Shown piece by piece: positions 16,620-47,865 of a DNA stretch of 64,000 nucleotides. A program made the position numbers and the translations under genes. Within the stretch, counting starts at the first letter, position 1. The number at the start of each line of letters is the position of its first letter. This DNA is from Octopus bimaculoides (taxonomy: Eukaryota): positions 42,485,042-42,549,041 of the forward strand of contig NC_068984.1 of NCBI RefSeq assembly GCF_001194135.2. The letters are read 5' to 3'. The notes beneath the pieces are model-generated. The model was not told where the DNA came from. It saw only the letters and a list, made by a program, of their open reading frames with translations, and did no database searches.

Positions 16620-19170
16620 GAATTATGTTTAGTAAGGCATCAGCGACAGAAAGAAGTAGAATAGATTGAAACTTAGAAACTTAGAAGAGCCGCTCAGGAA
16701 AGGCGTTGCAATCAACGTACTGGCGAAATTGACTCTGGACCAATTCAACGCTAAGCACGAAGGATATAAAAATGAGGAAACGGAAGCCGCTCAACGGGAC
16801 CGAGAGGTAGAGGTAAAACGTGGCAACAAATCCACAATTCGGTCTTTGGTGGACCAAACTAGGCGCACAGCATTCGAGCCCGAGACGTTGTGTACGGCAT
16901 TTCAACAGCATGTTGCGCGGCTGTTTGGGACAAATGTCAGACCGTATGCAAGAGGGAGGAACATTACGAAATGCCGATAACAACTGCGGAAATACATGAT
17001 GAGATGATGGGCTGCACAGAGGGTAAATGGTTTGGTTTGGATGGTCTGCTCCGTGAGCTATACTTTTACATGTCAGACTTGTTTGGCAGCCTGTTAACCG
17101 ATATCTACCTCAACTGGCAGCAGAACAGGAGAATTCCTAATTCTCTGAGTCAAGGGGCGGTAGCACTGCTGAGAAAGAACACAAACAATGGGGATTAATG
17201 GAAAATTTTAGGCACGTAACGTAGACTTCAAAATTTGAACCAAGGTTTTAGCATATAGGTTGGCGCTTGTTGTCAAGGAACTGATTTGTGATGCGCAAAC
17301 ATGCGAAATCTCAAGCAGATTAATGCTCGACAACCTCCACCTCATACAATACATCATAGGCAGAGTGGATAGAGGAGTTGGCATGGGTTGAGCCCAAATC
17401 AATTGGGATCAATCTGAAGCCTTTGATAAGGTCGACCACCAATACTTGGCAGCCGTTCTCACAGTGGCCCGATGTTTTCCGTGGCTGTATCGATGCAATG
17501 TACAGCGACATCTACTCGGTAGTTCAGATGAACGGTTACCTATTGGAACCATTCAGTATCATGCGTTCGGTCCGTCAAGGGTGTCTACTCTCGTCTCTTC
17601 TGTATGTACCGGCTCTAGAGACACTACTATAGAAATTGGAGACGTTGAGAAGCATCTCGCGCGAACTAGGACGTGGGAGAACCGTGTCAGCATACGCAGA
17701 CAACGTCACCATCATAGTGTCGGAATCTAGGCGCATAAATCTGGTCAGCACTGCTGTAAGAGACTACGATTTGGTGAGAGGAGCAAAAATTAACCAAGAA
17801 AAGCCAGTGGCCTACAGCTTAGAGTCTGGTTTGGTCCGGATCTCCAGGTAGAGAAGTACTTGAACTACGTGACGAGCAGGGTGGCCAATCACACCTAGAA
17901 ATGCGATGAGAGAAAGCCATCCCTAAAACGTCGGGCAGAAGAGGTAAATACATTGACTTCGCTATATCTTATCGACTTACCACCGTGCCTTGCCCATGCG
18001 TACGTGTAACCAAACTGGAGTGCATACTCTTCCGCTTTCTGCAGAAGGGACGCGTTCCACTGGTCAGGCGCTCCATTTGATGTCAACTCTTACTGAATGG
18101 AGAGCTGGACATGCCGTGGCTGCTGATTCTCGGAGATGAGCTGAGGCTATGACATCAGCGCTTCCTTGAGGATGTGCAGGTGTGATCGTCGTTTGTCAGA
18201 CAGGATTTTTACAGCTCGTCTCCTTGTGCTGCTGTCCTGGATCGAGCTTAGACCGAGGCAGGGTGCGTGGCATCTAGAGTGTTATCAGGTGCTCATAATC
18301 CTCTGTCAGTAGAGCAATTCGGTCGGTGGAAGTTCCACTCTGGCGTTCTATAGAGGGTTAGTAGCAGGGAAATGCGATGACGTTCTTCAGGAGAATCTGG
18401 ATGTCGACAAGAATAAACTAACTTCTTTGTTCCGGAGGACTTTCCTGCTGGGGCTAATGGATTATTTCCAGAAATCCTTGACCTCTCAATGATACTGGGA
18501 AGCATTACCGGTTTGGAATAAACTCCACAGACATGGAAGTGTAATCAGCCGAGCTTACCAGAGATGCGCGCAGAACGACGAAACTGCACGCTCTCGTATT
18601 GCTGTGGGCTTATGTCGAACACTTGCTATCACGTGTAGGACGGAACCAGCTTTCGATTGAGTCCGTTGTGGAGAAGGTCCCGCCACCTCCATTGATCAGC
18701 AAGGGCAGGCAGTTTTTATTTGTGTGGCAGTCTTAGTGAAAGACGTTGTGGTGGACCTTATTGAAACGGTTGAAGACAGATACTTTCCTCTTTTCTAACT
18801 CCTCATCAATTATTTCGAGTTTCACATGAAAAGGAAAGTGAGAGTAGAGTGGGAAGTGTTGCCTCCTTGCAATTTTGCTGAAAGGCTGGTGAATGTGGGC
18901 AGAACGATCTGAGTGAACGGGCCTACGCTAAGTACGCGTCTATAGTCGATAAGGATAGGGCACTGGCTCTACTGGTCAGGGTGTCCGAGGTTTTCTGGGG
19001 TTTCCACGAGCAGTCCTTGAAAGTCACCCTCTTTCGGCAAATTTTTCATTGTTATAATTTATTTTATAATTTTCAGTTTACACGCTCCATTTTATGTAAC
19101 CCTACTGAGTATCGTCTTGTACCGGTCCCCAATGTTATTTTTTATGAACCTTTAGTGGTGAATAAATAAA
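16620..19170 (+). mobile_element. 5'-truncated, frameshifted L1/Tx1-clade LINE
   Basis: RT motifs GLDGL..ELY, DQSEAFDKVDH, RSVRQGCLLSSLLYV, YADNVT and GAKIN spread over shifted frames. Degenerate C-terminal RCAQNDET. AATAAA near 19161. Confidence 0.85.
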
Positions 19171-19849: not shown

Positions 19850-21260
19850 CCTTTGAACAGCTTTTAACGCTGGAGACATACTACGGTGTCAGCTGTTCAA
19901 TACCAGTGAACTAAGGTAACACCTCTTATTTTTCGAGCACCTTCCGGAGTATTCGAGCGCTCCCGAGCAGTGCTGTTTTCTGCAAGTGCTCCACTCTTAT
20001 TTCAGCCCCTATTTGTTCCATGTAATTCTCGAAATTTTTACTCACTGTTCTCAGGGCTCCGACAATAATTGCTACCACTACCGCCTTTTTCATCGACCAC
20101 AACTGCTTTACCTCCCAAGCTAAACTGTCACACCTATCGACTTTTCTTTCTTTCTTATCGCTTACCTTGTTGTCAGCTGGACATGCTATATCTATGATCC
20201 AACATAGTTTGGCATCTTTCTCAATTATTACTATGTCTAGCTACATATTCTCTATCTCATGGTCACACTGAATCATAAAATCCTACAGGATCTTTGCATT
20301 ATCATTTTCGATGATGCCTTCGGGTTTGTGGTCATACTAATTTTTAGATTCTGCACTTGTCACTTTCTGATGTGTTGTCTACTCAGTATTTTATGTAGTT
20401 TGTTCTTAGTGCTTGCTCTTAGGCAGCACAGATTAAAGCCTCCGTTTCCGGTTTTAAATCACTTTTAGTCATCCACAGCCATCTTTGTTTTTCTGTCTGT
20501 CTTATTATCTTCAACATCACTATGAAATTGTCCATGCATTCTTTTCTTTACCCATCTATTTTCAGTTTCAATCGTTTTCAATTGCTTGTACAGTGCTTTA
20601 TCTTTGCAATCTTTCATCCTATACAAGCCTGACCTTCTTGCTTCTAATAATAACGGTTCTGTGGCATTTTTTTACATACCATGCTATGTTGTTTTCTACT
20701 GCTCTAATGCTGTGTTCGCATCCAATAAGTCCTCTTACCCCTCTTTTTCTTGGTACATATAGTCTGACTGTGCCATTTTTAGGTGGAGTGTTCCATATCT
20801 AGTTAGCAACTTCCTTGTCTTTCTGTCTAAGCAGTTTAGTTCGTCTACTATCCATGTGATTACCCCTGCTCCATATCTAAGGAGTGAAACCGCCCAGGTG
20901 TTGATAGCTTCGATCTTATTCTGTACGTTTAATTTCGACTTCAGGATCAGTCTCAGTCTGCGCAAGTACTCCACCATAAATTTTTCTGTCATTTGTTTCT
21001 CCATCAATTTCTCCATTTCCAAAATCCCCAAGTACTTATAACCCGTCTCTTCTATCTGCTTCATAACCTCCCCCGACGGTATCGATAGCCCATCCATACA
21101 TTTGATTTTGTCTCTCTTCAAGACCAACACACCACACTTTCTCAGTCCGAACTCTATTCTGATATCAGCACTGAAGGTATACACCGTATCAACGAGGGAA
21201 CTAACTTAGGCTTCATCTTCACCATAAAGTTTGTGATCATCCATGAACAACAAATGGTTA
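19850..21260 (-). mobile_element. 5'-truncated R4/Dong-clade non-LTR retrotransposon (RT plus restriction-like endonuclease), inactivated
   Basis: FMDD at 21236-21247, FGLRKC, YKYLG, NKIEAINTWA, then RLE region IL*DFMIQCDH..IIDIACPAD..KKEEK and C-terminal LQKTALLGSARILRKVLEK* (stop at 19926-19928). Flanked by (TAA)n on both sides. Confidence 0.8.
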
Positions 21261-32508: not shown

Positions 32509-32720
32509 TATTTGTGTGTCTGTGTTTGTTCTCCTCACCATCACTTGACAACCGATGCTGGTGTGTTTACGTCCCCGTAACTTAGCGATTCGGCAAACGA
32601 AACCGATAGAATAAGTATTAGGCTTACAAAGAATAAGTCCTGCAGTCGAAATGTTCGACTAAAGGCAGTGCCCCAACATGGCCGCAGTCAAATGACTGAA
32701 ACAAATAAAAGAATAAAAAA
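32245..32720 (+). mobile_element. Full-length SINE family B
   Basis: GGCGCAGGAGTGGCTGTG A-box, GGTTCAGTCCC B-box, CCTTGGGCAAGT core, internal (AT)/(GA) tract, tail ending aaataaaagaataaaa. Confidence 0.9.
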
Positions 32721-38088: not shown

Positions 38089-38345
38089 NNNNNNNNNNNN
38101 NNNNNNNNNNNNNNNNNNNNNNNNNNNNNNNNNNNNNNNNNNNNNNNNNNNNNNNNNNNNNNNNNNNNNNNNNNNNNNNNNNNNNNNNNNNNNNNNNNNN
38201 NNNNNNNNNNNNNNNNNNNNNNNNNNNNNNNNNNNNNNNNNNNNNNNNNNNNNNNNNNNNNNNNNNNNNNNNNNNNNNNNNNNNNNNNNNNNNNNNNNNN
38301 NNNNNNNNNNNNNNNNNNNNNNNNNNNNNNNNNNNNCTTGCTTAG

Positions 38346-38395
38346 CTCCCTCCCTGTACGCCCGCCGCCGCCGCCGCCGCCGCCGCCCGCCCGTT
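38346..38395 (+). repeat. (GCC)n GC-rich tract about 150 bp upstream of the ATG, possibly promoter or 5'UTR
   Basis: ccgccgccg run in otherwise AT-rich DNA, next to an assembly gap. Confidence 0.6.
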
Positions 38396-38545
38396 TCTTC
38401 GTCTGTCTGTCTGTTAGTTAGTCAGTCAGTCAGTTAGTCCGTCAGATGCATATTAGCCACTAGCGATTTCTCTTTCGATGCCTTCTCCCGTCGCCTCGGA
38501 AGACTACACCTCGGAACGCTAAGACAAAATGTTCTTGCATTCAAT

Positions 38546-38641
38546 ATGGCTACTACCAGGCCTGCATATGTTTTTACCTCATGTTTCTGTCTTGTTCAAT
38601 CGCTCTTGTTCATGCTATTCTTGATCTGGAATGTCTCTACA
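38546..38641 (+). other. Predicted signal peptide (aa 1-32)
   Basis: Basic n-region (R5), hydrophobic core VFTSCFCLVQSLLFMLFLIW, plausible VST|SP cleavage site. Judged by eye. Confidence 0.65.
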
Positions 38642-40020
38642 TCACCTACAATACCATCGTCACCGTCGCCGTCGTCGCCAGCATCCTTGTCGCCGCTGTT
38701 GTCAACGTCGTCGCCGCCGTCGTCGCTACCGTCCATGTCATCTTCATCATCACCATTATCATCGGCAGCATCACCTCCGTCGCCATCATCATCAGCAGCA
38801 GCAGCAGGAGCAGCAGCAGTAACAACGGTACCATCAACATCGTTTAATTTACCAGCGTCATCCCCTTACCAACATTTTCAATTACCGGCTTTCCCACCGT
38901 CATCAACATCACCGCCGTTATCTTCCTCCTTTTCTTCGTCACCATCCTTGTTATCGGTGTCGCCGTCATCACGGTCACTCTCTTCTCGAGTATTGTCTCA
39001 TACGCCACCAGCGTTGGCCACCATGCAGCTGTTATCCAGTAAGCAGCCGAGTTTGGTGCCAGGCTTCAATAATTCAGCCGTATCTGCTTCGATTCACTTG
39101 GACAAGTTTTCGGTGGCATCTGAAAACGTTAGCATTATCGCTACCGTCACCACCACCAACACCACCACCACCACCAACAACAACAACAACGACATAAATA
39201 ACAATGAAACGAATCGAATTATTATAGACAATGGGTCACAGCGCAACTACTATCACCAGAACCAGCAGCGGCAGAAACAACAACAACAACAACAACAACG
39301 ACAGCAGCAACAACAACAACAACAACAACAACAACAAAACCAACAAAGACAGAAAAAATCAGAAAATCAGCAACGCTGGCGGATACGAGAAGATAAAAAA
39401 GAAGAAAAACATCATCAACATGAACAAAAGCAGAAACCACAAACACAACAACAACACCAACCACAACTTCTGATTCTACTTCAAAAAGAAGAAAGACGAA
39501 CACTTCGGCGATTACAAAAACAACAACAGCAACATCAAAACCAGCATTATCACCAACACCAGAAGCAGCAACAGCTGCGACATCAACAACAACAACACCG
39601 GCAACAAAATCTACAGCTGCATGGTTTGAATTCGACGCAGCAAGCACAGCAAAAGTATGGAAATCTCTACAAACAACAACGAGGGCGGAATAGCTCGTTG
39701 GCTTATCTTAATCAATTCTACCGCTGGTCCCAAGGGATCCCTACTAAACAACGGGACCAACAGATACACAATGGATATTCGGATTATAACGGGTTAACAA
39801 ATTCCTCTTCACTTTCCAATCTAACAAGCTCCGAGCATGTTCGTGCGGTAAACAACACTCGGTCACTTTTATCATCTTTGTATATTAATAATATAGTTGG
39901 TAACATTACCCACACTAACAAAACAGACGTTACTATGCACGCGTTGACAAACACATCCTCGCCTTCACCTTCACCTTCACCGTCACTGACACCAACACCT
40001 ACACCACCACCGCTATCGCT

Positions 40021-40071
<51 letters not shown>

Positions 40072-41775
40072 GCCGTCACATCCATCATTATCGTTTGATC
40101 GATTATCAACTTCTCCACTAACATCAATAGCACAATCAACGAAAACATTAATTACATCATCACATCCATCACTTATATCATCAACATCAACATCGTCATC
40201 ATCATTGTTGCCGTCATCCTCCTCATCTTCCTCATCCTCATCATCATCATTGTCATCTTCCATACCACTACCATCACGCACGAAAAATTACTTATCAACA
40301 TTATTGTTATCGTCATCGAATTTGTCGTCTATATTCTCCTCATTAAATGTAAAAGTGAATCCGTTAAAGGAATTGTTTAGGGTTGAGAAAAGTGAAAAGC
40401 ATGCAAAAAACAATTGGGACTTTGAGGACAAAAGGGGAAATATTGGTGGGAACGAAACAGATATATCATTAAAAGACAAGACTGAGACCGAAACACGGCA
40501 GCATCGCGATGCTGTGTTTACCGGTTATAACCGTGATACTGTAAAATTAAACAAAACATTGAAGCCTCACAACCACACACACAAACGTCTACATGACAAC
40601 AACAATAACAAAAACAACACTTTTAACAAAAACAACAAATCACTTCCAGAAATGGATACCTACACGAACACGCGTCCTGCCATTTCAAAGGAAACATTTG
40701 TTTCTGGACACTTACTTTCAGTGCCAACGTTGAAGGCGGATCATGTCGCAGGTAAAGACAAACCATTACGGATTATTACTGACATTACTAACCGCGACTT
40801 ATCTGTAACTGGCACAGCGGAAACACACACTCCGTTAAAGAAAAGTGACATACAAATGACACAAAACTCTATGAAAGGCAGAGACACGACTGTTTTACAA
40901 GTAAAATTACACAGTTCTAAAAATATTTCAAAGAATTTTTCTGCCGACACGGACACCGTTAATCGGGACAAAGAAAGCAATCGGAACGCTATCTCTGACC
41001 GCGGTGACTACGATATTCATGAAAAACTATCGACTGCTACTGTGGAGAAAAACATCTCCTCACCGATGGATTTAGCACGGATTAAGCAGAGCGGAAGAAA
41101 ACACCTGATTGATATTCTACAGGTCAGTTCTAAAAGACAATTGACAAGTGAAACTATGTCAAACTTAAAGTCCTTTGCTGGATTACCCAGGCCCTTTGAC
41201 AACGTTGATTCGCTGATCAACAATTCAGTATCTGTTGTTCAAAATAATGTTTCCTTTTCTCTTCCTTCTCCTCTCAATTCTTCTTCTTCTTCTTCTTCTT
41301 CTTCTTCTTCTTCTTCTTCTTCTTCTTCTTCTTCTTCTTCTTCTTCTTCTTCTTCTTCTTCTTCTTCTTCTTCTTCTTCTTCCTCACAGATGCATCGGAC
41401 AAAACACTTTGATCTACACCCTACCTCTCCCACACACACTTTCATTGCACGTATGACATCGCACTCAACGCAGGCCCCGTCGTTGCCCGCGTTACCACCG
41501 TCGCGATCATCGGCAAAGTCGACACCTGAAAATGTGCCGACAGCCACGACGACGTCGTCGGTACTGTCAACAACGTCGCCGTTTGTTCTACCTTCGAAAG
41601 AAGGGCGTAAAATAAAGGTCTTGCCCGATCAGCATCTGACAATAAATGTCGACGATGTAAATAATGCCCTAAAAAGTCTTCCAAGTAAGAAAACGAATTT
41701 AAATAAAGTTAGGGATAAATTTTACATTTATTTCAGGCACTATAATAAGAGTATGAAAAGCTTTAATTATATTAA

Positions 41776-41834
<59 letters not shown>

Positions 41835-42792
41835 ATATTAGTAGTAAACAGAGAAACAGTACCACAAACAACTTTGTTAACAATAACAATGACACTATCT
41901 TCCTTCCATCCAAGCAACAACACCCTAACAACATAAAGAATAACCATGACGACAATAGCAACAACAAAAACAACAGTAACCATAACACTATCAGTGGTGC
42001 CCGAACACAAGGTAAGCTCCTTGATCGCAAACATATCATGAACCCCACAAATACACTTGACGCTGTCACGGTTTCAAGTTCCGTACCAGCGGCAAATGAC
42101 AAACTGACATCACCTACAACTTTCTCCCCCTCGTTCTCTTCTAGTTCTTCTCCTCCATCTACTTTCCCTTCATTATCTGAATTAGTGACAAACCGTGACC
42201 CAATATCCTCGGTTACGGACCCTAATGGGAATCTGCAAGACAACCACACACAAACACAAAACCATCCACAACAACAACAACAGCAACAACAAACACAACA
42301 ATCACAGAAACAGAGACGACCGCCGTCACCATCAACGCCACCTTCACAACATCAGACACAGATAAGTGGCGGGCAACAAGAAGCCAAATCTTCAGTAAAT
42401 GACAATTTAAACGGCCGGGATTCCAGTAATAATGGCTTTGATCGGAAAAATGAGGACAGTACAGACGGGATGGCGAAAATCCGTCACAAACGAAGCTTTT
42501 TGGACTATTACTACGAACAGTGGGAGAAACTACAAGAAAATACAGATTTTATAGATGAATCAGTTGCTATAATACCTTCAAACTATGACAGCGATTTATC
42601 GTCAGACGATCTGGCGAAAACAGTCGAACAAACTAATACTCCGGACTCCTTCCAAGGGAACCAAGCTGCTTATGGCAGCGGAGCTGATATGTCTTTCTCC
42701 AATTTGGTGCCATGCTCCAGTAAAGAGCGATTGTTTTGTCTTAATGGGGGTACCTGTTACATTATGGTGATGATGGAACGAAAAACATGCAA
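38546..42792 (+). CDS. Large coding exon of a secreted or membrane pro-EGF-family ligand (neuregulin-like): signal peptide, long low-complexity prodomain, RHKR site, N-terminal half of the EGF domain; gene continues after an intron
   Basis: 1416-codon ORF stays open across many triplet microsatellites. Hydrophobic N-terminus (aa 9-28). No Cys between aa 15 and aa 1390. Ends SNLVPCSSKERLFCLNGGTCYIMVMMERKTCK, resembling NRG1 SHLVKCAEKEKTFCVNGGECFMV and NRG4 FCLNGGLCY as recalled. TGC AA|GTAAGT donor at 42793 gives a phase-2 intron. Confidence 0.85.
42482..42493 (+). other. Furin/proprotein convertase site RHKR (aa 1313-1316)
   Basis: CGT CAC AAA CGA matches R-X-K-R and is followed by the only complex, aromatic-rich stretch (SFLDYYYEQWEKLQE). 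Confidence 0.65.
42713..42792 (+). other. EGF domain cysteines 1-4 (C1390, C1398, C1404, C1415)
   Basis: C-x7-C-x5-C-x10-C spacing with FCLNGGTC fits the ErbB-ligand consensus CX7CX4-5CX10-13CXCX8C. Confidence 0.85.
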
Positions 42793-42798
42793 GTAAGT
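42793..42798 (+). promoter_or_regulatory. 5' splice donor GTAAGT
   Basis: Perfect consensus directly after the codon for Cys4 plus two bases of the next codon. Confidence 0.85.
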
Positions 42799-43406: not shown

Positions 43407-44518
43407 ATGAGAGAGAGAGGGAGAAAGCGTAGTGGGGAGAGAAAACGTCTCAGGAGCCAAGCACCGAAACTTAAATGTCAAATGACGTGTAATTAAGTAG
43501 CTTATAATACCGAGATCGAATCCTTTCAAATACTAATACATACTTTCACAGCTTCAGCTTACCGAGAATAACTTTTAGGGAAAACTACGTAAATAAAACA
43601 AAGTCCCAACAAGGCCCTGTTGATTTTTGATTTCTTGTGTATAATGGTCCAAATGGACCTTTCCCTATTCCGTATCACATGTGATACACAGGGTATACAG
43701 GATACATTTCCCTGTCGTCCATGCATCATATATGATACACATGCCCAATTATTTTGAACCATCAGGATAATTTAGGACTTATGAAAGAAAAACCTTTTTA
43801 TTCCTCAAAACGTATGAAAACAAGGGATGACTAAAAGTCTGAAAACGAGTACGTGCGTTTAAGTAAAAACTTTTGAAAAGGCTGTGGACAGGCAAAGGGT
43901 TAATAAAAAAAATATGTTATATTCAGTGACAGAAACGGTAAAGACCGAACAAAGGAGTAAAATAATTTTACTAATGAGATTTATTGTCTTCATTGTTATG
44001 CGTTCAAATACTATCGATCATTGAGAATTTTTCGTATTTTTGATTTGAGGTATAACTGCGCTGGAGTGAACGTAATTAAATTAATAGCGTTATCAATTAA
44101 CTGTGATTTCCGTGTAACATGCATCGAGGTAAAGAAAACAAAAACAACAAGCAGAAAAATCCTTGGTAGTTGTAGCCCTAGTTTTTGTTGTAATATTGTT
44201 TTAATATGCATGAATCTCTAAAATAGCGGTAGAGCAGCGACAAAACAGGAAAGGTCAAAGTTCAATGATGTGCATAATGACTTTAAATACTAAATGAGAC
44301 GTCATGCATGAACAGGAAAGGAATATAGTCTATCGTTTATTTTTACCGATTCTGACGGAATAAAATGATAAAGTTGTTCAATACATGATTTAAACTCACA
44401 ACGGAGAATAGCAAAACTTAAATGCACTAAAGTCAGTCTTCATATTGGTTTCCTTTTATTATTTTTTTTTTCAATAGTCTGCTGAGCCTCCTCCTTTAGC
44501 AATAATTCTTTCTACCGT

Positions 44519-44709
44519 GGGTACAAGGCCTGAAATTTTGGGGAAGGGACATCGACGCCAGTGACCAACTGGCACTTATTTTATCGACCCCAAAAGGATG
44601 AAAGGCAAAACCGACCTCAGGGGAATTCGAATTCAGAATATAAAGACGAACAAAATGCTGCTAAACATTTTGTCCGGCGTCATAACGATGTTGCCAGCTC
44701 GCCACCTTC
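44519..44709 (-). mobile_element. SINE family C
   Basis: cttattttatcgaccccaaaaggatgaaaggcaaa and gccagctcgccacc blocks. Confidence 0.75.
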
Positions 44710-46367: not shown

Positions 46368-46838
46368 TGGGTGTGTGGTAAGAGGCTCGCTTCCCAACCA
46401 CATGGTTCCGGATCGAGCCCCACTGCATGGCTCTTTGGGCAAGTGTCTCGGACCGACCAAACCTTTGTGAGTGAATTTGGTAGATGGAAACTGAAAGAAG
46501 CCCGTCGTATATATATATATATATATATATATATNNNNNNNNNNNNNNNNNNNNNNNNNNNNNNNNNNNNNNNNNNNNNNNNNNNNNNNNNNNNNNNNNN
46601 NNNNNNNNNNNNNNNNNNNNNNNNNNNNNNNNNNNNNNNNNNNNNNNNNNNNNNNNNNNNNNNNNNNNNNNNNNNNNNNNNNNNNNNNNNATCCCCATAG
46701 CCGGTTCGGCAAAAGAGACCGATAGAATAGATACTAGGCTTACAAAGAATAAGTCCTGGGGTCGACTTGCTCGAGTAAAGGCGTTGCTCCAGCATCGCCG
46801 AAGTCAAATGACAGAAACAAGTAAAAGAATAAAAGAAT
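46368..46838 (+). mobile_element. SINE family B spanning a gap
   Basis: Head, body and tail match the 32245 copy on both sides of the N-run. Confidence 0.85.
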
Positions 46839-46849
46839 GTGAAATTATC

Positions 46850-47276
46850 TCTTATCTTTTAATTGTTTTTCAGTCATTAGACTGCGACCATGCTGGAGCA
46901 TCACCTTGAAGAATATTAACCGAATAAATCGATCACAGAACTTTTTCTTTTTAAAGCTTGGTCCTTATTCTATCGATCTCTTTTGTCAAAGCGCTAAATT
47001 ACACGGACGGAAACTCACCAACACCGGTTGTCAAGCGGTGGAGATGGGGACAAACACAGAGACACACAGAGAGATATATGTACACGCACACACACACACA
47101 CACATATATGTATACTACAGGCTTCTTTCAGTTTCCGTCTACCAAATCAACTTACAATACTTTGGTTAACCCGAGGATATAGTAGAAAACCCTTGCCCAC
47201 GGTGCTACGCAGTGGGACAGAACCCGGAACCATGTGGTTGGGAAGCAAGCTTCTTACCACACAGCCACGCCTGCGC
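46850..47276 (-). mobile_element. SINE family B, antisense full-length copy
   Basis: Reverse complement of the 32245 copy, ending cacagccacgcctgcgc. Confidence 0.85.
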
Positions 47277-47499: not shown

Positions 47500-47865
47500 C
47501 AATGAGTGAATATATCGCTTGACAACTGATGTTTGTGTGTTTACATCCCCATAGCCGGTTCGGCAAAAGAGTCCGATAGAATAAATATTAGGCTTACAAA
47601 GAATAAGTCCTGGGGTCGACTTGCTCGAGTAAAGGCGTTGCTCCAGCATCGCCGAAGTCAAATGACAGAAACAAGTAAAAGAATAAAAGAATGTGAAATT
47701 ATCTCTTATCTTTTACTTGTTTCAGTCATTACACTGCGGCCATGCTGGAGCACCACCTTGAAGAATATTAACCGAATAAATCGAACACTACTTTTTCTTT
47801 TTAAAGCCTGGTCCTTATTCTATCGATCTCTTTTGTCAAAGCGCTAAATTACACGGACGGAAACA
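47500..47865. mobile_element. Partial family B tails in tail-to-tail arrangement, duplicate of 46691-47015
   Basis: Near-identical over about 320 bp, including the non-SINE junction. Confidence 0.85.

What the first reader, a model, noticed from the sequence alone, without database searches (positions are those of the whole stretch)
38546..42792. Giant single-exon precursor of an Ig-less neuregulin-like ErbB ligand in a probable cephalopod
Seen: a signal peptide, about 1,280 aa of Cys-free Ser/Thr/Pro/Gln/Asn sequence with many N-x-S/T sequons, RHKR, then an EGF half-domain with C-x7-C-x5-C-x10-C spacing. Known: this spacing and FCLNGG.CY typify neuregulins and EGFR ligands. NRG1 types I/II and Drosophila Vein carry an Ig domain, whereas NRG3 has a Ser/Thr mucin-like stalk instead. 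Inference: this is an NRG3/NRG4-like, Ig-less mollusc ligand with an exceptionally long prodomain, and the best candidate for new biology in this window. Such low-complexity genes are easily left uncharacterised by pipelines.
Basis: partly seen in the sequence, partly recalled or inferred. Interest (0 to 1): 0.72.

Follow-up and report, generated by a model that had tools for sequence, protein, structure and literature searches.

The report
Octopus secreted EGF-family growth-factor gene
This is the large first coding exon of an octopus gene for a secreted EGF/neuregulin-type growth factor; it is real, but related genes are already on record in other molluscs, so it is a modest rather than a striking find.

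Summary
Window 38546-42792 (+) is one 1416-codon open frame: signal peptide, about 1,280 aa of Cys-free low-complexity sequence, one furin-type site (RHKR 1313-1316), an acidic 73-aa linker, and the first four cysteines of an EGF module. It ends at a GTAAGT donor that splits the codon after C4.

It is exon 1 of a two-coding-exon gene. Exon 2 is not in the window. Orthologues supply it:
- Octopus vulgaris CAI9720644.1: ...KTCNCPAGYIGERCEMIDHEY
- golden cuttlefish mRNA contig: ...KTCRCPVGYSGQRCEQIDHNYIYNIL*, then a 3'UTR
- abalone LOC124283664: two exons, 36.5-kb intron

All three share the phase-2 intron after C4, an Arg before C6 and a stop soon after the EGF module. None has a transmembrane segment or an Ig domain.

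Against all PDB sequences, the domain and a family profile match ErbB ligands first (EGF, NRG1, epigen, epiregulin, Spitz), ahead of Notch.

"ErbB-ligand-type, Ig-less" is therefore supported. "Neuregulin" rather than "EGF-like" is unresolved, and the membrane anchor of NRG3/NRG4 is absent. The closest characterised analogue is the secreted molluscan L-EGF.

The giant prodomain is not conserved even between octopus and cuttlefish. The O. vulgaris orthologue is already auto-annotated "pro-neuregulin-4". Verdict: new member of a known kind.

The parts
38529..38624 (+). Upstream ORF of 31 codons. It starts 17 nt before the main ATG, is out of frame, and overlaps the signal-peptide codons. It lies in a conserved stretch of 5'UTR.
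   Evidence: the octopus uORF (MFLHS...CYS*) and the cuttlefish uORF (29 codons, MYLNS...CYS*) start and end at homologous positions; the 5'UTR just before the ATG is nearly identical in the two species.
38546..38644 (+). Start codon and N-terminal hydrophobic segment (aa 1-33). Probably a cleavable signal peptide, with a possible cleavage site after V-S-T.
   Evidence: It is the only hydrophobic peak in the protein (Kyte-Doolittle 2.3, aa 6-28). It is 56% identical to the cuttlefish N-terminus, where V-C-A sits at the homologous -3/-1 position.
38645..42481 (+). Cys-free, low-complexity prodomain of about 1,280 aa. It contains poly-Ser, poly-Gln, poly-Asn and S/T/P-rich tracts encoded largely by trinucleotide repeats.
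   Evidence: Composition and homopolymer runs. Trinucleotide arrays. Codon-position bias. Not alignable to the cuttlefish orthologue. The corresponding region before the furin-type site is about 750 aa in cuttlefish and about 210 aa in abalone.
41120..41848 (+). In-frame 729-nt segment (aa 859-1101) that the O. vulgaris gene model treats as an intron: CAG|GTCAGT ... AAACAG|. It is open in this window, so it may be an alternatively spliced internal intron or an annotation artefact.
   Evidence: Alignment of P0001 to the ORF. GT/AG at exactly the two boundaries. No stops in 243 codons, against 11 and 40 stops in the other two frames.
42482..42493 (+). Furin-type cleavage site R-H-K-R (aa 1313-1316), followed by S-F-L.
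   Evidence: It is the only R-x-K/R-R in the protein. It is conserved as RKKR-SFL in cuttlefish and as RSRR-SY in abalone.
42494..42712 (+). Acidic 73-aa linker between the cleavage site and the EGF module (14 D/E against 2 K/R). It has no dibasic site.
   Evidence: The first ~20 residues (SFLDYYYEQWEKLQE) and the last ~20 (NQAAYGSG...SNLVP) are conserved in cuttlefish.
42713..42792 (+). First two-thirds of the EGF module, C1-C4: CSSKERLFCLNGGTCYIMVMMERKTC plus two bases of the next codon.
   Evidence: Spacing x7-x5-x10. The best PDB matches are NRG1, then EGF, an EGF/TGF-alpha chimera and amphiregulin.
42793..42798 (+). Splice donor GTAAGT, phase 2, immediately after C4. The in-frame TAA that ends the ORF overlaps the donor.
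   Evidence: The same position and phase are seen in cuttlefish (AG|GTGAGT) and abalone (AG|GTGAGC).

Best explanation
Window 38546-42792 is the first coding exon of the octopus member of a molluscan two-coding-exon gene. The gene encodes a secreted, single-EGF ligand of the EGFR/ErbB-ligand family with no membrane anchor.

Shown:
- Exon 1 carries the start codon, an N-terminal hydrophobic signal sequence, a long non-conserved low-complexity prodomain, a conserved furin-type site, an acidic linker and cysteines C1-C4.
- A phase-2 intron follows C4.
- In orthologues a small second exon, tens of kb away, adds C5-x8-C6 with the Arg before C6, a 7-19-aa tail and a stop codon.

Inferred mechanism:
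- The precursor enters the ER and the Ser/Thr/Asn-rich prodomain is glycosylated.
- A furin-like convertase cuts after RHKR1316.
- This frees a C-terminal fragment of about 118 aa (acidic linker plus EGF module) that diffuses and activates the cephalopod EGFR homologue.
- No ADAM or rhomboid shedding step is needed, because there is no transmembrane anchor.
- The extra length of the octopus prodomain comes from trinucleotide-repeat expansion. It is spacer rather than a conserved functional domain.
For: - Real coding exon: ORF statistics and codon-position bias.
- Orthologues from a search of 1.84 billion proteins: O. vulgaris CAI9720644.1 (E 6e-77, 96% identity) and a cuttlefish cluster (E 2e-11).
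- Species of the Logan runs: golden cuttlefish.
- Spliced mRNA evidence: cuttlefish RNA-seq contig L007 joins the unspliced big ORF to ...CRCPVGYSGQRCEQIDHNYIYNIL, then a stop and about 730 nt of 3'UTR. Two further RNA contigs encode the same end.
- Genomic cuttlefish contigs show the intron at AG|GTGAGT.
- Abalone: exon 1 ends ...KTC AG|GTGAGC, the intron is 36.5 kb, and exon 2 encodes RCPMGYTGLRCEMIDQEYILSLLTNSIMFD*.
- The O. vulgaris gene spans 138 kb, which explains why exon 2 is absent from the 21 kb downstream in the window.
- Ligand class: PDB rankings. A splice site between C4 and C5 and an Arg before C6 are published diagnostics of ErbB ligands (PMC1618406).
- Conservation is confined to three islands: signal sequence, furin region and pre-EGF plus EGF.
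Against: - Exon 2 of this species was not seen, because it lies outside the window.
- There is no RNA evidence from the octopus itself. The O. vulgaris model is truncated at the N-terminus and its evidential basis is unknown.
- Alternative 3' exons encoding a transmembrane segment cannot be excluded (neuregulin-1 has both kinds of isoform, by my own knowledge).
- Receptor binding, furin cleavage and secretion are all inferred.
- Pfam EGF scores for the cephalopod proteins fall just below the curated cut-off (20.6 and 21.2 against 21.5 bits). The abalone protein passes (29.6 bits).
- The published criterion 'EGF module next to a transmembrane domain' is not met.
- The AlphaFold model of the mature region was too poor to use (pLDDT 45).
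Confidence: 0.8

Rival explanations
1. It is a true membrane-bound pro-neuregulin (NRG3/NRG4-like, as the first reader proposed and as the O. vulgaris record is named). A transmembrane and cytoplasmic part would be encoded by further downstream exons, and the ligand would be released by juxtamembrane shedding.
For: - The source names the O. vulgaris orthologue 'pro-neuregulin-4, membrane-bound isoform'.
- The C1-C3 half is most similar to neuregulin-1, including the S-x-L-V-x-C lead-in.
- The cysteine spacing x7-x5-x10-x1-x8 is that of NRG4 and of EGF (my own knowledge of those sequences).
- The O. vulgaris gene range is 138 kb, which leaves room for more exons.
Against: - All three available products end 7-19 aa after C6 with no hydrophobic stretch.
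- The cuttlefish mRNA has a stop codon and a 3'UTR there.
- The abalone gene has only two coding exons.
- With the full domain or a family profile, EGF scores as well as or better than NRG1.
- No Ig domain and no neuregulin intracellular domain were found by Pfam.
Confidence: 0.1
2. It is a secreted mucin-like or matrix glycoprotein. The Ser/Thr/Pro-rich body is the functional part and the C-terminal EGF module is structural, not a receptor ligand.
For: - 35% S/T/P, long poly-Ser tracts and 33 sequons.
- Vertebrate mucins 3, 4, 12 and 17 also carry EGF modules split between C4 and C5 (PMC1618406).
- A mussel foot protein built of EGF repeats appears among the PDB matches.
Against: - The 'mucin' body is not conserved even between octopus and cuttlefish, and shrinks to about 210 aa in abalone. 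The signal sequence, furin site and EGF module are conserved.
- A conserved convertase site would separate the body from the EGF module.
- Sequons are no more frequent than the composition predicts.
Confidence: 0.07
3. The long open frame is an accident of trinucleotide-repeat-rich DNA, or a dead gene relic, and is not translated as such.
For: - Much of the ORF is encoded by trinucleotide arrays.
- Pfam finds nothing in it.
- Word-index searches found no relatives at first.
Against: - The probability of no stop is about 1e-34 and shuffles reach at most 187 codons.
- Orthologous open frames exist in O. vulgaris, cuttlefish and abalone, with the same splice site.
- The cuttlefish orthologue is present in RNA-seq contigs from several runs.
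Confidence: 0.02

Closest known systems
Lymnaea stagnalis L-EGF (Hermann et al. 2000, as described in PMC4210270)
   Same: Both are molluscan, with a single EGF module, secreted rather than membrane-bound. L-EGF acts through an ErbB-type receptor (L-EGFR). The abalone orthologue found here (288 aa; signal peptide, RSRR, EGF, short tail) has the same general plan.
   Different: I could not obtain the L-EGF sequence (paper not held), so orthology is untested. The octopus precursor carries a low-complexity prodomain of about 1,280 aa, and I know of no equivalent in L-EGF.
Octopus vulgaris CAI9720644.1, 'pro-neuregulin-4, membrane-bound isoform' (automatic annotation)
   Same: It is the orthologue: 96% identical over the last 127 aa, and 428 of 468 aligned residues overall. 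It supplies the missing C5-C6 part.
   Different: That model starts at an internal Met (aa 703 here), so it has no signal peptide. It splices out aa 859-1101. Despite its name it contains no membrane-spanning segment.
Vertebrate neuregulins (NRG1 EGF domain; NRG3 and NRG4 as Ig-less forms)
   Same: The SNLVPCSSKERLFCLNGGTCYIMV segment matches 14 of 24 residues of NRG1 SHLVKCAEKEKTFCVNGGECFMVK. Both have the intron between C4 and C5 (PMC1618406). A Ser/Thr-rich region precedes the EGF module as in NRG3 (my own knowledge).
   Different: There is no transmembrane or cytoplasmic domain in any orthologue and no Ig domain. The C3-C4 loop is 10 residues, against 13 in NRG1 (alignment). The C-terminal third (CNCPAGYIGERC in O. 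vulgaris) resembles EGF more.
EGF / TGF-alpha / Spitz-type EGFR ligands ('EGF-type' of Barberan et al. 2016, PMC4914847)
   Same: The architecture is one EGF module without Ig, and that survey lists soluble forms with zero TM segments. EGF is the best match of the molluscan family profile (E 7e-12 to 2e-11).
   Different: Most members are type I membrane precursors released by ADAM or rhomboid proteases (my own knowledge). Here release would be by a furin-type cut on the N-terminal side only.
Drosophila Vein and the soluble neuregulin-1 isoforms
   Same: Both are ErbB ligands made without a membrane anchor (Vein is described as secreted in PMC1618406).
   Different: Vein and NRG1 types I/II carry an Ig domain (PMC4914847). 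None is present here.

Membership tests
EGFR/ErbB ligand family (criteria of Stein and Staros 2006, PMC1618406) | Six-cysteine EGF module with ligand-type spacing | tested here: met
   C1-C4 with x7-x5-x10 are in the window. C5-x8-C6 are in the O. vulgaris, cuttlefish and abalone orthologues. They were not seen for this species because exon 2 lies outside the window.
EGFR/ErbB ligand family (criteria of Stein and Staros 2006, PMC1618406) | [quoted passage not shown] | tested here: met
   TGC AA|GTAAGT at 42792/42793. The same phase-2 site occurs in cuttlefish and abalone, and the junction is confirmed in cuttlefish mRNA.
EGFR/ErbB ligand family (criteria of Stein and Staros 2006, PMC1618406) | Arg immediately before the sixth cysteine | tested here: met
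   GERC (O. vulgaris), GQRC (cuttlefish) and GLRC (abalone). Seen in orthologues only.
EGFR/ErbB ligand family (criteria of Stein and Staros 2006, PMC1618406) | EGF module placed next to a transmembrane domain | tested here: not met
   The products end 7-19 aa after C6 with no hydrophobic segment. Known secreted ligands (Vein, L-EGF) also fail this criterion.
EGFR/ErbB ligand family (criteria of Stein and Staros 2006, PMC1618406) | EGF module more similar to known ligands than to non-signalling EGF repeats | tested here: met
   Half-domain: the matches are NRG1 x5, then EGF, an EGF/TGF-alpha chimera and amphiregulin, with no Notch. Family profile: 24 of the top 26 PDB matches are ErbB ligands; the other two are an EGF-like ant toxin and a mussel foot protein. 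Notch first appears at rank 27.
EGFR/ErbB ligand family (criteria of Stein and Staros 2006, PMC1618406) | Binds and activates an EGFR/ErbB receptor | not testable with these tools
   Needs a receptor phosphorylation or binding assay.
Neuregulin type (Barberan et al. 2016: Ig + EGF + TM; vertebrate NRG1-4) | Immunoglobulin I-set domain N-terminal to the EGF module | tested here: not met
   Pfam finds no domain in the 1416 aa. There are no cysteines between aa 15 and 1390. The cuttlefish mRNA has only 5'UTR upstream.
Neuregulin type (Barberan et al. 2016: Ig + EGF + TM; vertebrate NRG1-4) | Transmembrane segment and neuregulin cytoplasmic region after the EGF module | tested here: not met
   Absent from all orthologue products. 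Untested for possible alternative isoforms.
Neuregulin type (Barberan et al. 2016: Ig + EGF + TM; vertebrate NRG1-4) | EGF module groups with NRG rather than with EGF/TGF-alpha ligands | tested here: inconclusive
   NRG1 is best for the C1-C4 half. It ties with EGF for the full domain (40 vs 39 bits). EGF is best for the family profile. No proper phylogeny was made, since the domain has only about 45 alignable residues.
Molluscan secreted EGF (L-EGF type) | Signal peptide, single EGF module, no membrane anchor | tested here: met
   The window gives the signal sequence and C1-C4. The orthologues give the end of the protein.
Molluscan secreted EGF (L-EGF type) | Sequence orthology to Lymnaea L-EGF | not tested

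The most novel reading that the evidence does not exclude
The unusually long and unusually conserved N-terminal hydrophobic segment is about 21 residues and 56% identical between octopus and cuttlefish, while the rest of the prodomain is unalignable. It might not be cleaved but act as a signal anchor.

The precursor would then be a type II membrane protein. It would hold the EGF module at the far tip of a glycosylated stalk of more than 1,000 aa, and the conserved furin cut would be the shedding step. This would be a topology inverted relative to all classical type I ErbB pro-ligands. Cephalopod-specific stalk expansion could then tune the reach of juxtacrine signalling.

The conserved overlapping uORF would add translational control.
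Probability: 0.1. Interest if true: 0.55.

Novelty: new member of a known kind. Interest (0 to 1): 0.33.

Why it matters
EGFR signalling in cephalopods is almost unstudied. My literature searches found no paper that characterises a cephalopod EGFR ligand, and the broad survey of EGFR ligands across animals covered no cephalopod (PMC4914847).

This locus gives a full-length exon 1 for such a ligand. It shows that the only public octopus model is truncated and misnamed as membrane-bound. It also ties octopus, cuttlefish and abalone genes into one family with a fixed two-exon structure.

That makes a concrete reagent available: the fragment after RHKR plus exon 2. It could be used to test EGFR signalling in cephalopod neural development or arm regeneration, where neuregulin-type signals have been proposed by analogy (PMC10550383).

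The giant repeat-driven prodomain is a curiosity of sequence evolution. It is not evidence of a new mechanism.

Tried and rejected
- Exon 2 in the window: I looked for C5-x8-C6 in the + strand of 42797-64000 with strict and loose patterns. Nothing credible appeared. The orthologous genes have introns of 36 kb to more than 100 kb, so this is expected.
- Pfam on the whole ORF and on the last 38 and 105 aa gave nothing useful.
- The word-index protein search with the last 128 aa found nothing, although the exhaustive HMMER search later found a 96% identical protein. The two later word-index searches gave the abalone orthologue, then only generic EGF-repeat proteins.
- An exact look-up of the ORF in assemblies found nothing on record.
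- DNA of the O. vulgaris locus was not delivered because the gene range is too long.
- The AlphaFold2 model of the region from the furin site to the C-terminus had mean pLDDT 45.5. I judged it too poor for a fold search and ran none.
- The original L-EGF paper (PMC6772968) is not held, and the supplement of PMC4914847 lists only gene identifiers. Orthology to L-EGF and to the Lottia ligand could therefore not be tested.
- I did not build an EGF-domain tree from sequences recalled from memory. I used PDB rankings instead.
- Reverse-transcriptase-looking ORFs at 16.8-17.8 kb and 20.7-21.2 kb gave no Pfam hit at E <= 0.01.
- Rfam and ARAGORN found nothing relevant to the gene.


Full report
**1. 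What is in the sequence**

The ORF listing gives one outstanding open frame in the whole 64-kb window: 38546..42796 on the + strand, 1416 codons plus stop. The rest of the window looks like cephalopod intergenic or intronic DNA. It has 30-40% G+C, thirteen runs of N, abundant microsatellites and SINE-like interspersed repeats.

The frame is not a chance product:
- From its own base composition, the probability of 1416 codons without a stop is about 1e-34.
- The longest open stretch in 200 shuffles is 187 codons.
- The other five frames of the same DNA contain 42-147 stops.
- Codon positions differ in composition inside the ORF but not in the DNA downstream.

- Cysteines occur only at aa 13 and 15 and at aa 1390, 1398, 1404 and 1415, with spacing x7-x5-x10.
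- The only hydrophobic segment is aa 6-28.
- S+T+P make up 35% of residues, with poly-Ser runs of up to 36 and poly-Gln runs of up to 12, encoded by trinucleotide arrays.
- RHKR at 1313-1316 is the only R-x-K/R-R site.
- The 33 N-x-S/T sequons are real but not enriched. Shuffling the protein gives 32.5 +/- 4.7.

**2. How the ORF ends**

The frame ends ...ACA TGC AA|G TAA GT. The stop codon therefore overlaps a perfect GTAAGT donor at 42793-42798. The exon ends at 42792 with two bases of a codon, directly after the fourth cysteine.

I searched the + strand downstream (42797-64000) for an exon that would supply C5-x8-C6, using strict and loose patterns, and found none.

**3. Relatives**

A word-index search with the last 128 aa found nothing. 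The exhaustive HMMER search of 1.84 billion representative proteins found two true relatives.

- **P0001** (E 6e-77, 96% identity) is GenBank CAI9720644.1. Its source names it 'pro-neuregulin-4, membrane-bound isoform [Octopus vulgaris]'. Its gene spans 138 kb of the chromosome-level assembly GCA_951406725.2. It ends ...MERKTCNCPAGYIGERCEMIDHEY, which supplies C5, eight residues, C6 and the G-x-R-C motif.
- **P0002** (E 2e-11) is a 924-aa open frame on 4.6-kb contigs assembled from public read sets. One run (ERR12945500) is cited as Acanthosepion esculentum short reads and another (SRR20545806) turns up in Sepia esculenta papers, so the species is the golden cuttlefish. The genomic contig ends the frame at ...ACA TGT AG|GTGAGT, the same position and phase as in the octopus.

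Other members of the P0002 cluster come from RNA-seq runs and are spliced. Contig L007 carries the whole 924-codon frame uninterrupted. It is joined to TGT CCA GTT GGA TAC TCT GGT CAA CGC TGC GAA CAA ATC GAC CAT AAT TAC ATT TAT AAT ATT CTC TAG, followed by about 730 nt of A/T-rich 3'UTR. Two further RNA contigs encode the same C-terminus. Upstream of the cuttlefish start codon, the mRNA is collinear with the genomic contig and non-coding.

A profile search then found **P0012**, 'uncharacterized protein LOC124283664 [Haliotis rubra]', 288 aa. Mapping it on its 43-kb locus shows two coding exons:
- Exon 1 runs from the start to ...AAA ACC TGC AG|GTGAGC.
- The intron is 36.5 kb.
- Exon 2 reads ...TTACAG|G TGC CCG ATG GGC ..., encoding RCPMGYTGLRCEMIDQEYILSLLTNSIMFD and a stop.

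Three molluscs therefore share the same plan: a gene with two coding exons, a phase-2 intron right after C4, a very long intron, and a protein that stops 7-19 residues after C6. That long intron explains why exon 2 is missing from this window.

**4. What is conserved**

Between the octopus ORF and the cuttlefish protein, BLASTP finds only three islands:
- the N-terminus (aa 1-33),
- the convertase site with its first downstream residues (M-x-K-x-R-x-K-R-S-F-L, aa 1309-1338),
- the 49 residues that lead into and include C1-C4 (53% identity).

The roughly 1,280 aa in between are unalignable. The corresponding region is about 750 aa in cuttlefish and about 210 aa in abalone, where the site is RSRR. 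The 'exceptionally long prodomain' is therefore fast-evolving spacer inflated by repeat expansion. It is not a conserved domain.

The linker after the cut is strongly acidic (14 D/E against 2 K/R) and has no further dibasic site.

**5. What kind of EGF module**

Against all 177,635 distinct PDB sequences:
- The last 38 aa of the window ORF match neuregulin-1/heregulin first (five entries, E 2e-5 to 8e-5; SNLVPCSSKERLFCLNGGTCYIMV against SHLVKCAEKEKTFCVNGGECFMVK). EGF, an EGF/TGF-alpha chimera and amphiregulin follow. No Notch, laminin or clotting-factor module passes.
- The complete O. vulgaris module matches NRG1 (2.5e-9) and EGF or EGF/TGF-alpha (6e-9 to 1e-8) almost equally. Epiregulin, betacellulin, TGF-alpha, epigen, HB-EGF and Spitz follow. 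The first Notch match is weaker (5.8e-7).
- A profile of the three molluscan modules puts EGF first (7e-12), then NRG1 (1.4e-10). Of the top 26 matches, 24 are ErbB ligands; the other two are an EGF-like ant toxin and a mussel foot protein.

Stein and Staros defined ErbB ligands by a splice site between C4 and C5, an Arg before C6 and proximity to a transmembrane domain (PMC1618406). The first two are met here and the third is not. The same is true of the secreted ligand Vein.

Pfam's generic EGF model scores the cephalopod proteins just under its cut-off and the abalone protein above it. Pfam finds no Ig domain and no neuregulin cytoplasmic domain.

In the architectural scheme of Barberan et al., neuregulin-type means Ig + EGF + TM, while EGF-type means EGF alone with zero to two TM segments (PMC4914847). 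This protein is EGF-type.

My conclusion is that membership of the ErbB-ligand class is well supported and assignment to the neuregulin branch is not.

**6. Mechanism**

Shown: the exon structure, the conserved islands and the anchor-less end of the orthologous products.

Inferred:
- The N-terminal segment directs the precursor into the ER. Both cephalopods have small residues at -3/-1 just after the hydrophobic core (V-S-T in octopus, V-C-A in cuttlefish), which favours cleavage.
- The Ser/Thr/Asn-rich body is glycosylated.
- A furin-type convertase cuts after RHKR.
- The C-terminal fragment of about 118 aa, ending in the EGF module, is released without any need for juxtamembrane shedding and acts on the EGFR homologue.

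The known precedent is Lymnaea L-EGF. [quoted passage not shown] I could not test sequence orthology to L-EGF.

**7. Open points**

- The O. vulgaris model begins at the Met that is aa 703 here. It omits aa 859-1101.
- In this window the borders of that omission are CAG|GTCAGT and AAACAG|. The omission is exactly 243 codons and stays open in frame.
- It may be a genuine alternative internal intron or an artefact of gene prediction across poly-Ser DNA. The cuttlefish mRNA shows no internal splicing.
- Isoforms with a transmembrane exon cannot be excluded without octopus cDNA.
- The window's species is an Octopus other than O. vulgaris: 428 of 468 aligned residues are identical. The gap-rich assembly suggests O. 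bimaculoides, but that is a guess.

**8. Verdict**

It is wrong or unproven on three points: the subfamily, the implied membrane anchoring, and the significance of the prodomain.

Related genes are already in public records. One is auto-named pro-neuregulin-4, and a secreted molluscan EGF has been known since 2000. I rate this a new member of a known kind, with moderate-to-low interest.

Noticed in passing
window 38529-38624 (and L007 239-328): A conserved upstream ORF starts 17 nt before the main ATG, is out of frame, and overlaps the signal-peptide codons. It has 31 codons in octopus and 29 in cuttlefish, both ending ...CYS*. The roughly 30 nt of 5'UTR before the ATG are almost identical in the two species, although most of the coding region is unalignable. 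This suggests translational control, and may also explain why the signal peptide is so well conserved.
   Followed up: partly
window 41120-41848: The O. vulgaris orthologue's gene model removes exactly this in-frame 729-nt stretch. It is bounded here by GTCAGT and CAG, yet it is open in frame in this window. It may be an alternatively spliced internal intron or an annotation artefact over poly-Ser DNA.
   Followed up: partly
window 38337-38445: Directly upstream of the gene, next to a 248-nt run of N (38089-38336), lie a (CCG)8-9 tract and a (GTCA)n array. This G+C-rich, promoter-like 5' region may be incomplete in the assembly.
   Followed up: no
window 46691-47014 and 47545-47864; also 32540-32718 and 56569-56706: A 320-bp element is present twice at 96% identity, 850 bp apart. 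More diverged copies occur elsewhere in the window, along with several other SINE-like families (e.g. 44502-44708, 51938-52159, 54338-54505, 58949-59144). None overlaps the ORF.
   Followed up: partly
window 16660-19170 (+) and 20735-21184 (-): These open stretches look by eye like fragments of a retrotransposon reverse transcriptase, and they coincide with the highest G+C in the window (42-43%). Pfam gave no hit at E <= 0.01 for five of them, so this is unconfirmed.
   Followed up: partly
window 2600-2672 (+): A weak tRNA-like match in Rfam (33 bits against a gathering score of 29) that ARAGORN does not call. It is probably a tRNA-derived SINE head or a pseudogene.
   Followed up: no
P0003 / P0004 (Schistocerca proteins XP_049772871.1 and XP_049855445.1): These locust proteins are named 'Notch-like' and 'fibropellin-like'. 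They consist of dozens of tandem EGF modules that all have the ligand-type pattern (FCLNGGTC ... YYC-x-C ... G-x-RCE), and they were the only non-mollusc hits to the half-EGF query.
   Followed up: no
L011 3001-3102 (Haliotis rubra): The abalone model starts 33 codons upstream of a second Met that immediately precedes the signal peptide (MGCTFFLPLLQLIVTLLALSEC). The annotated start is probably too far upstream.
   Followed up: no
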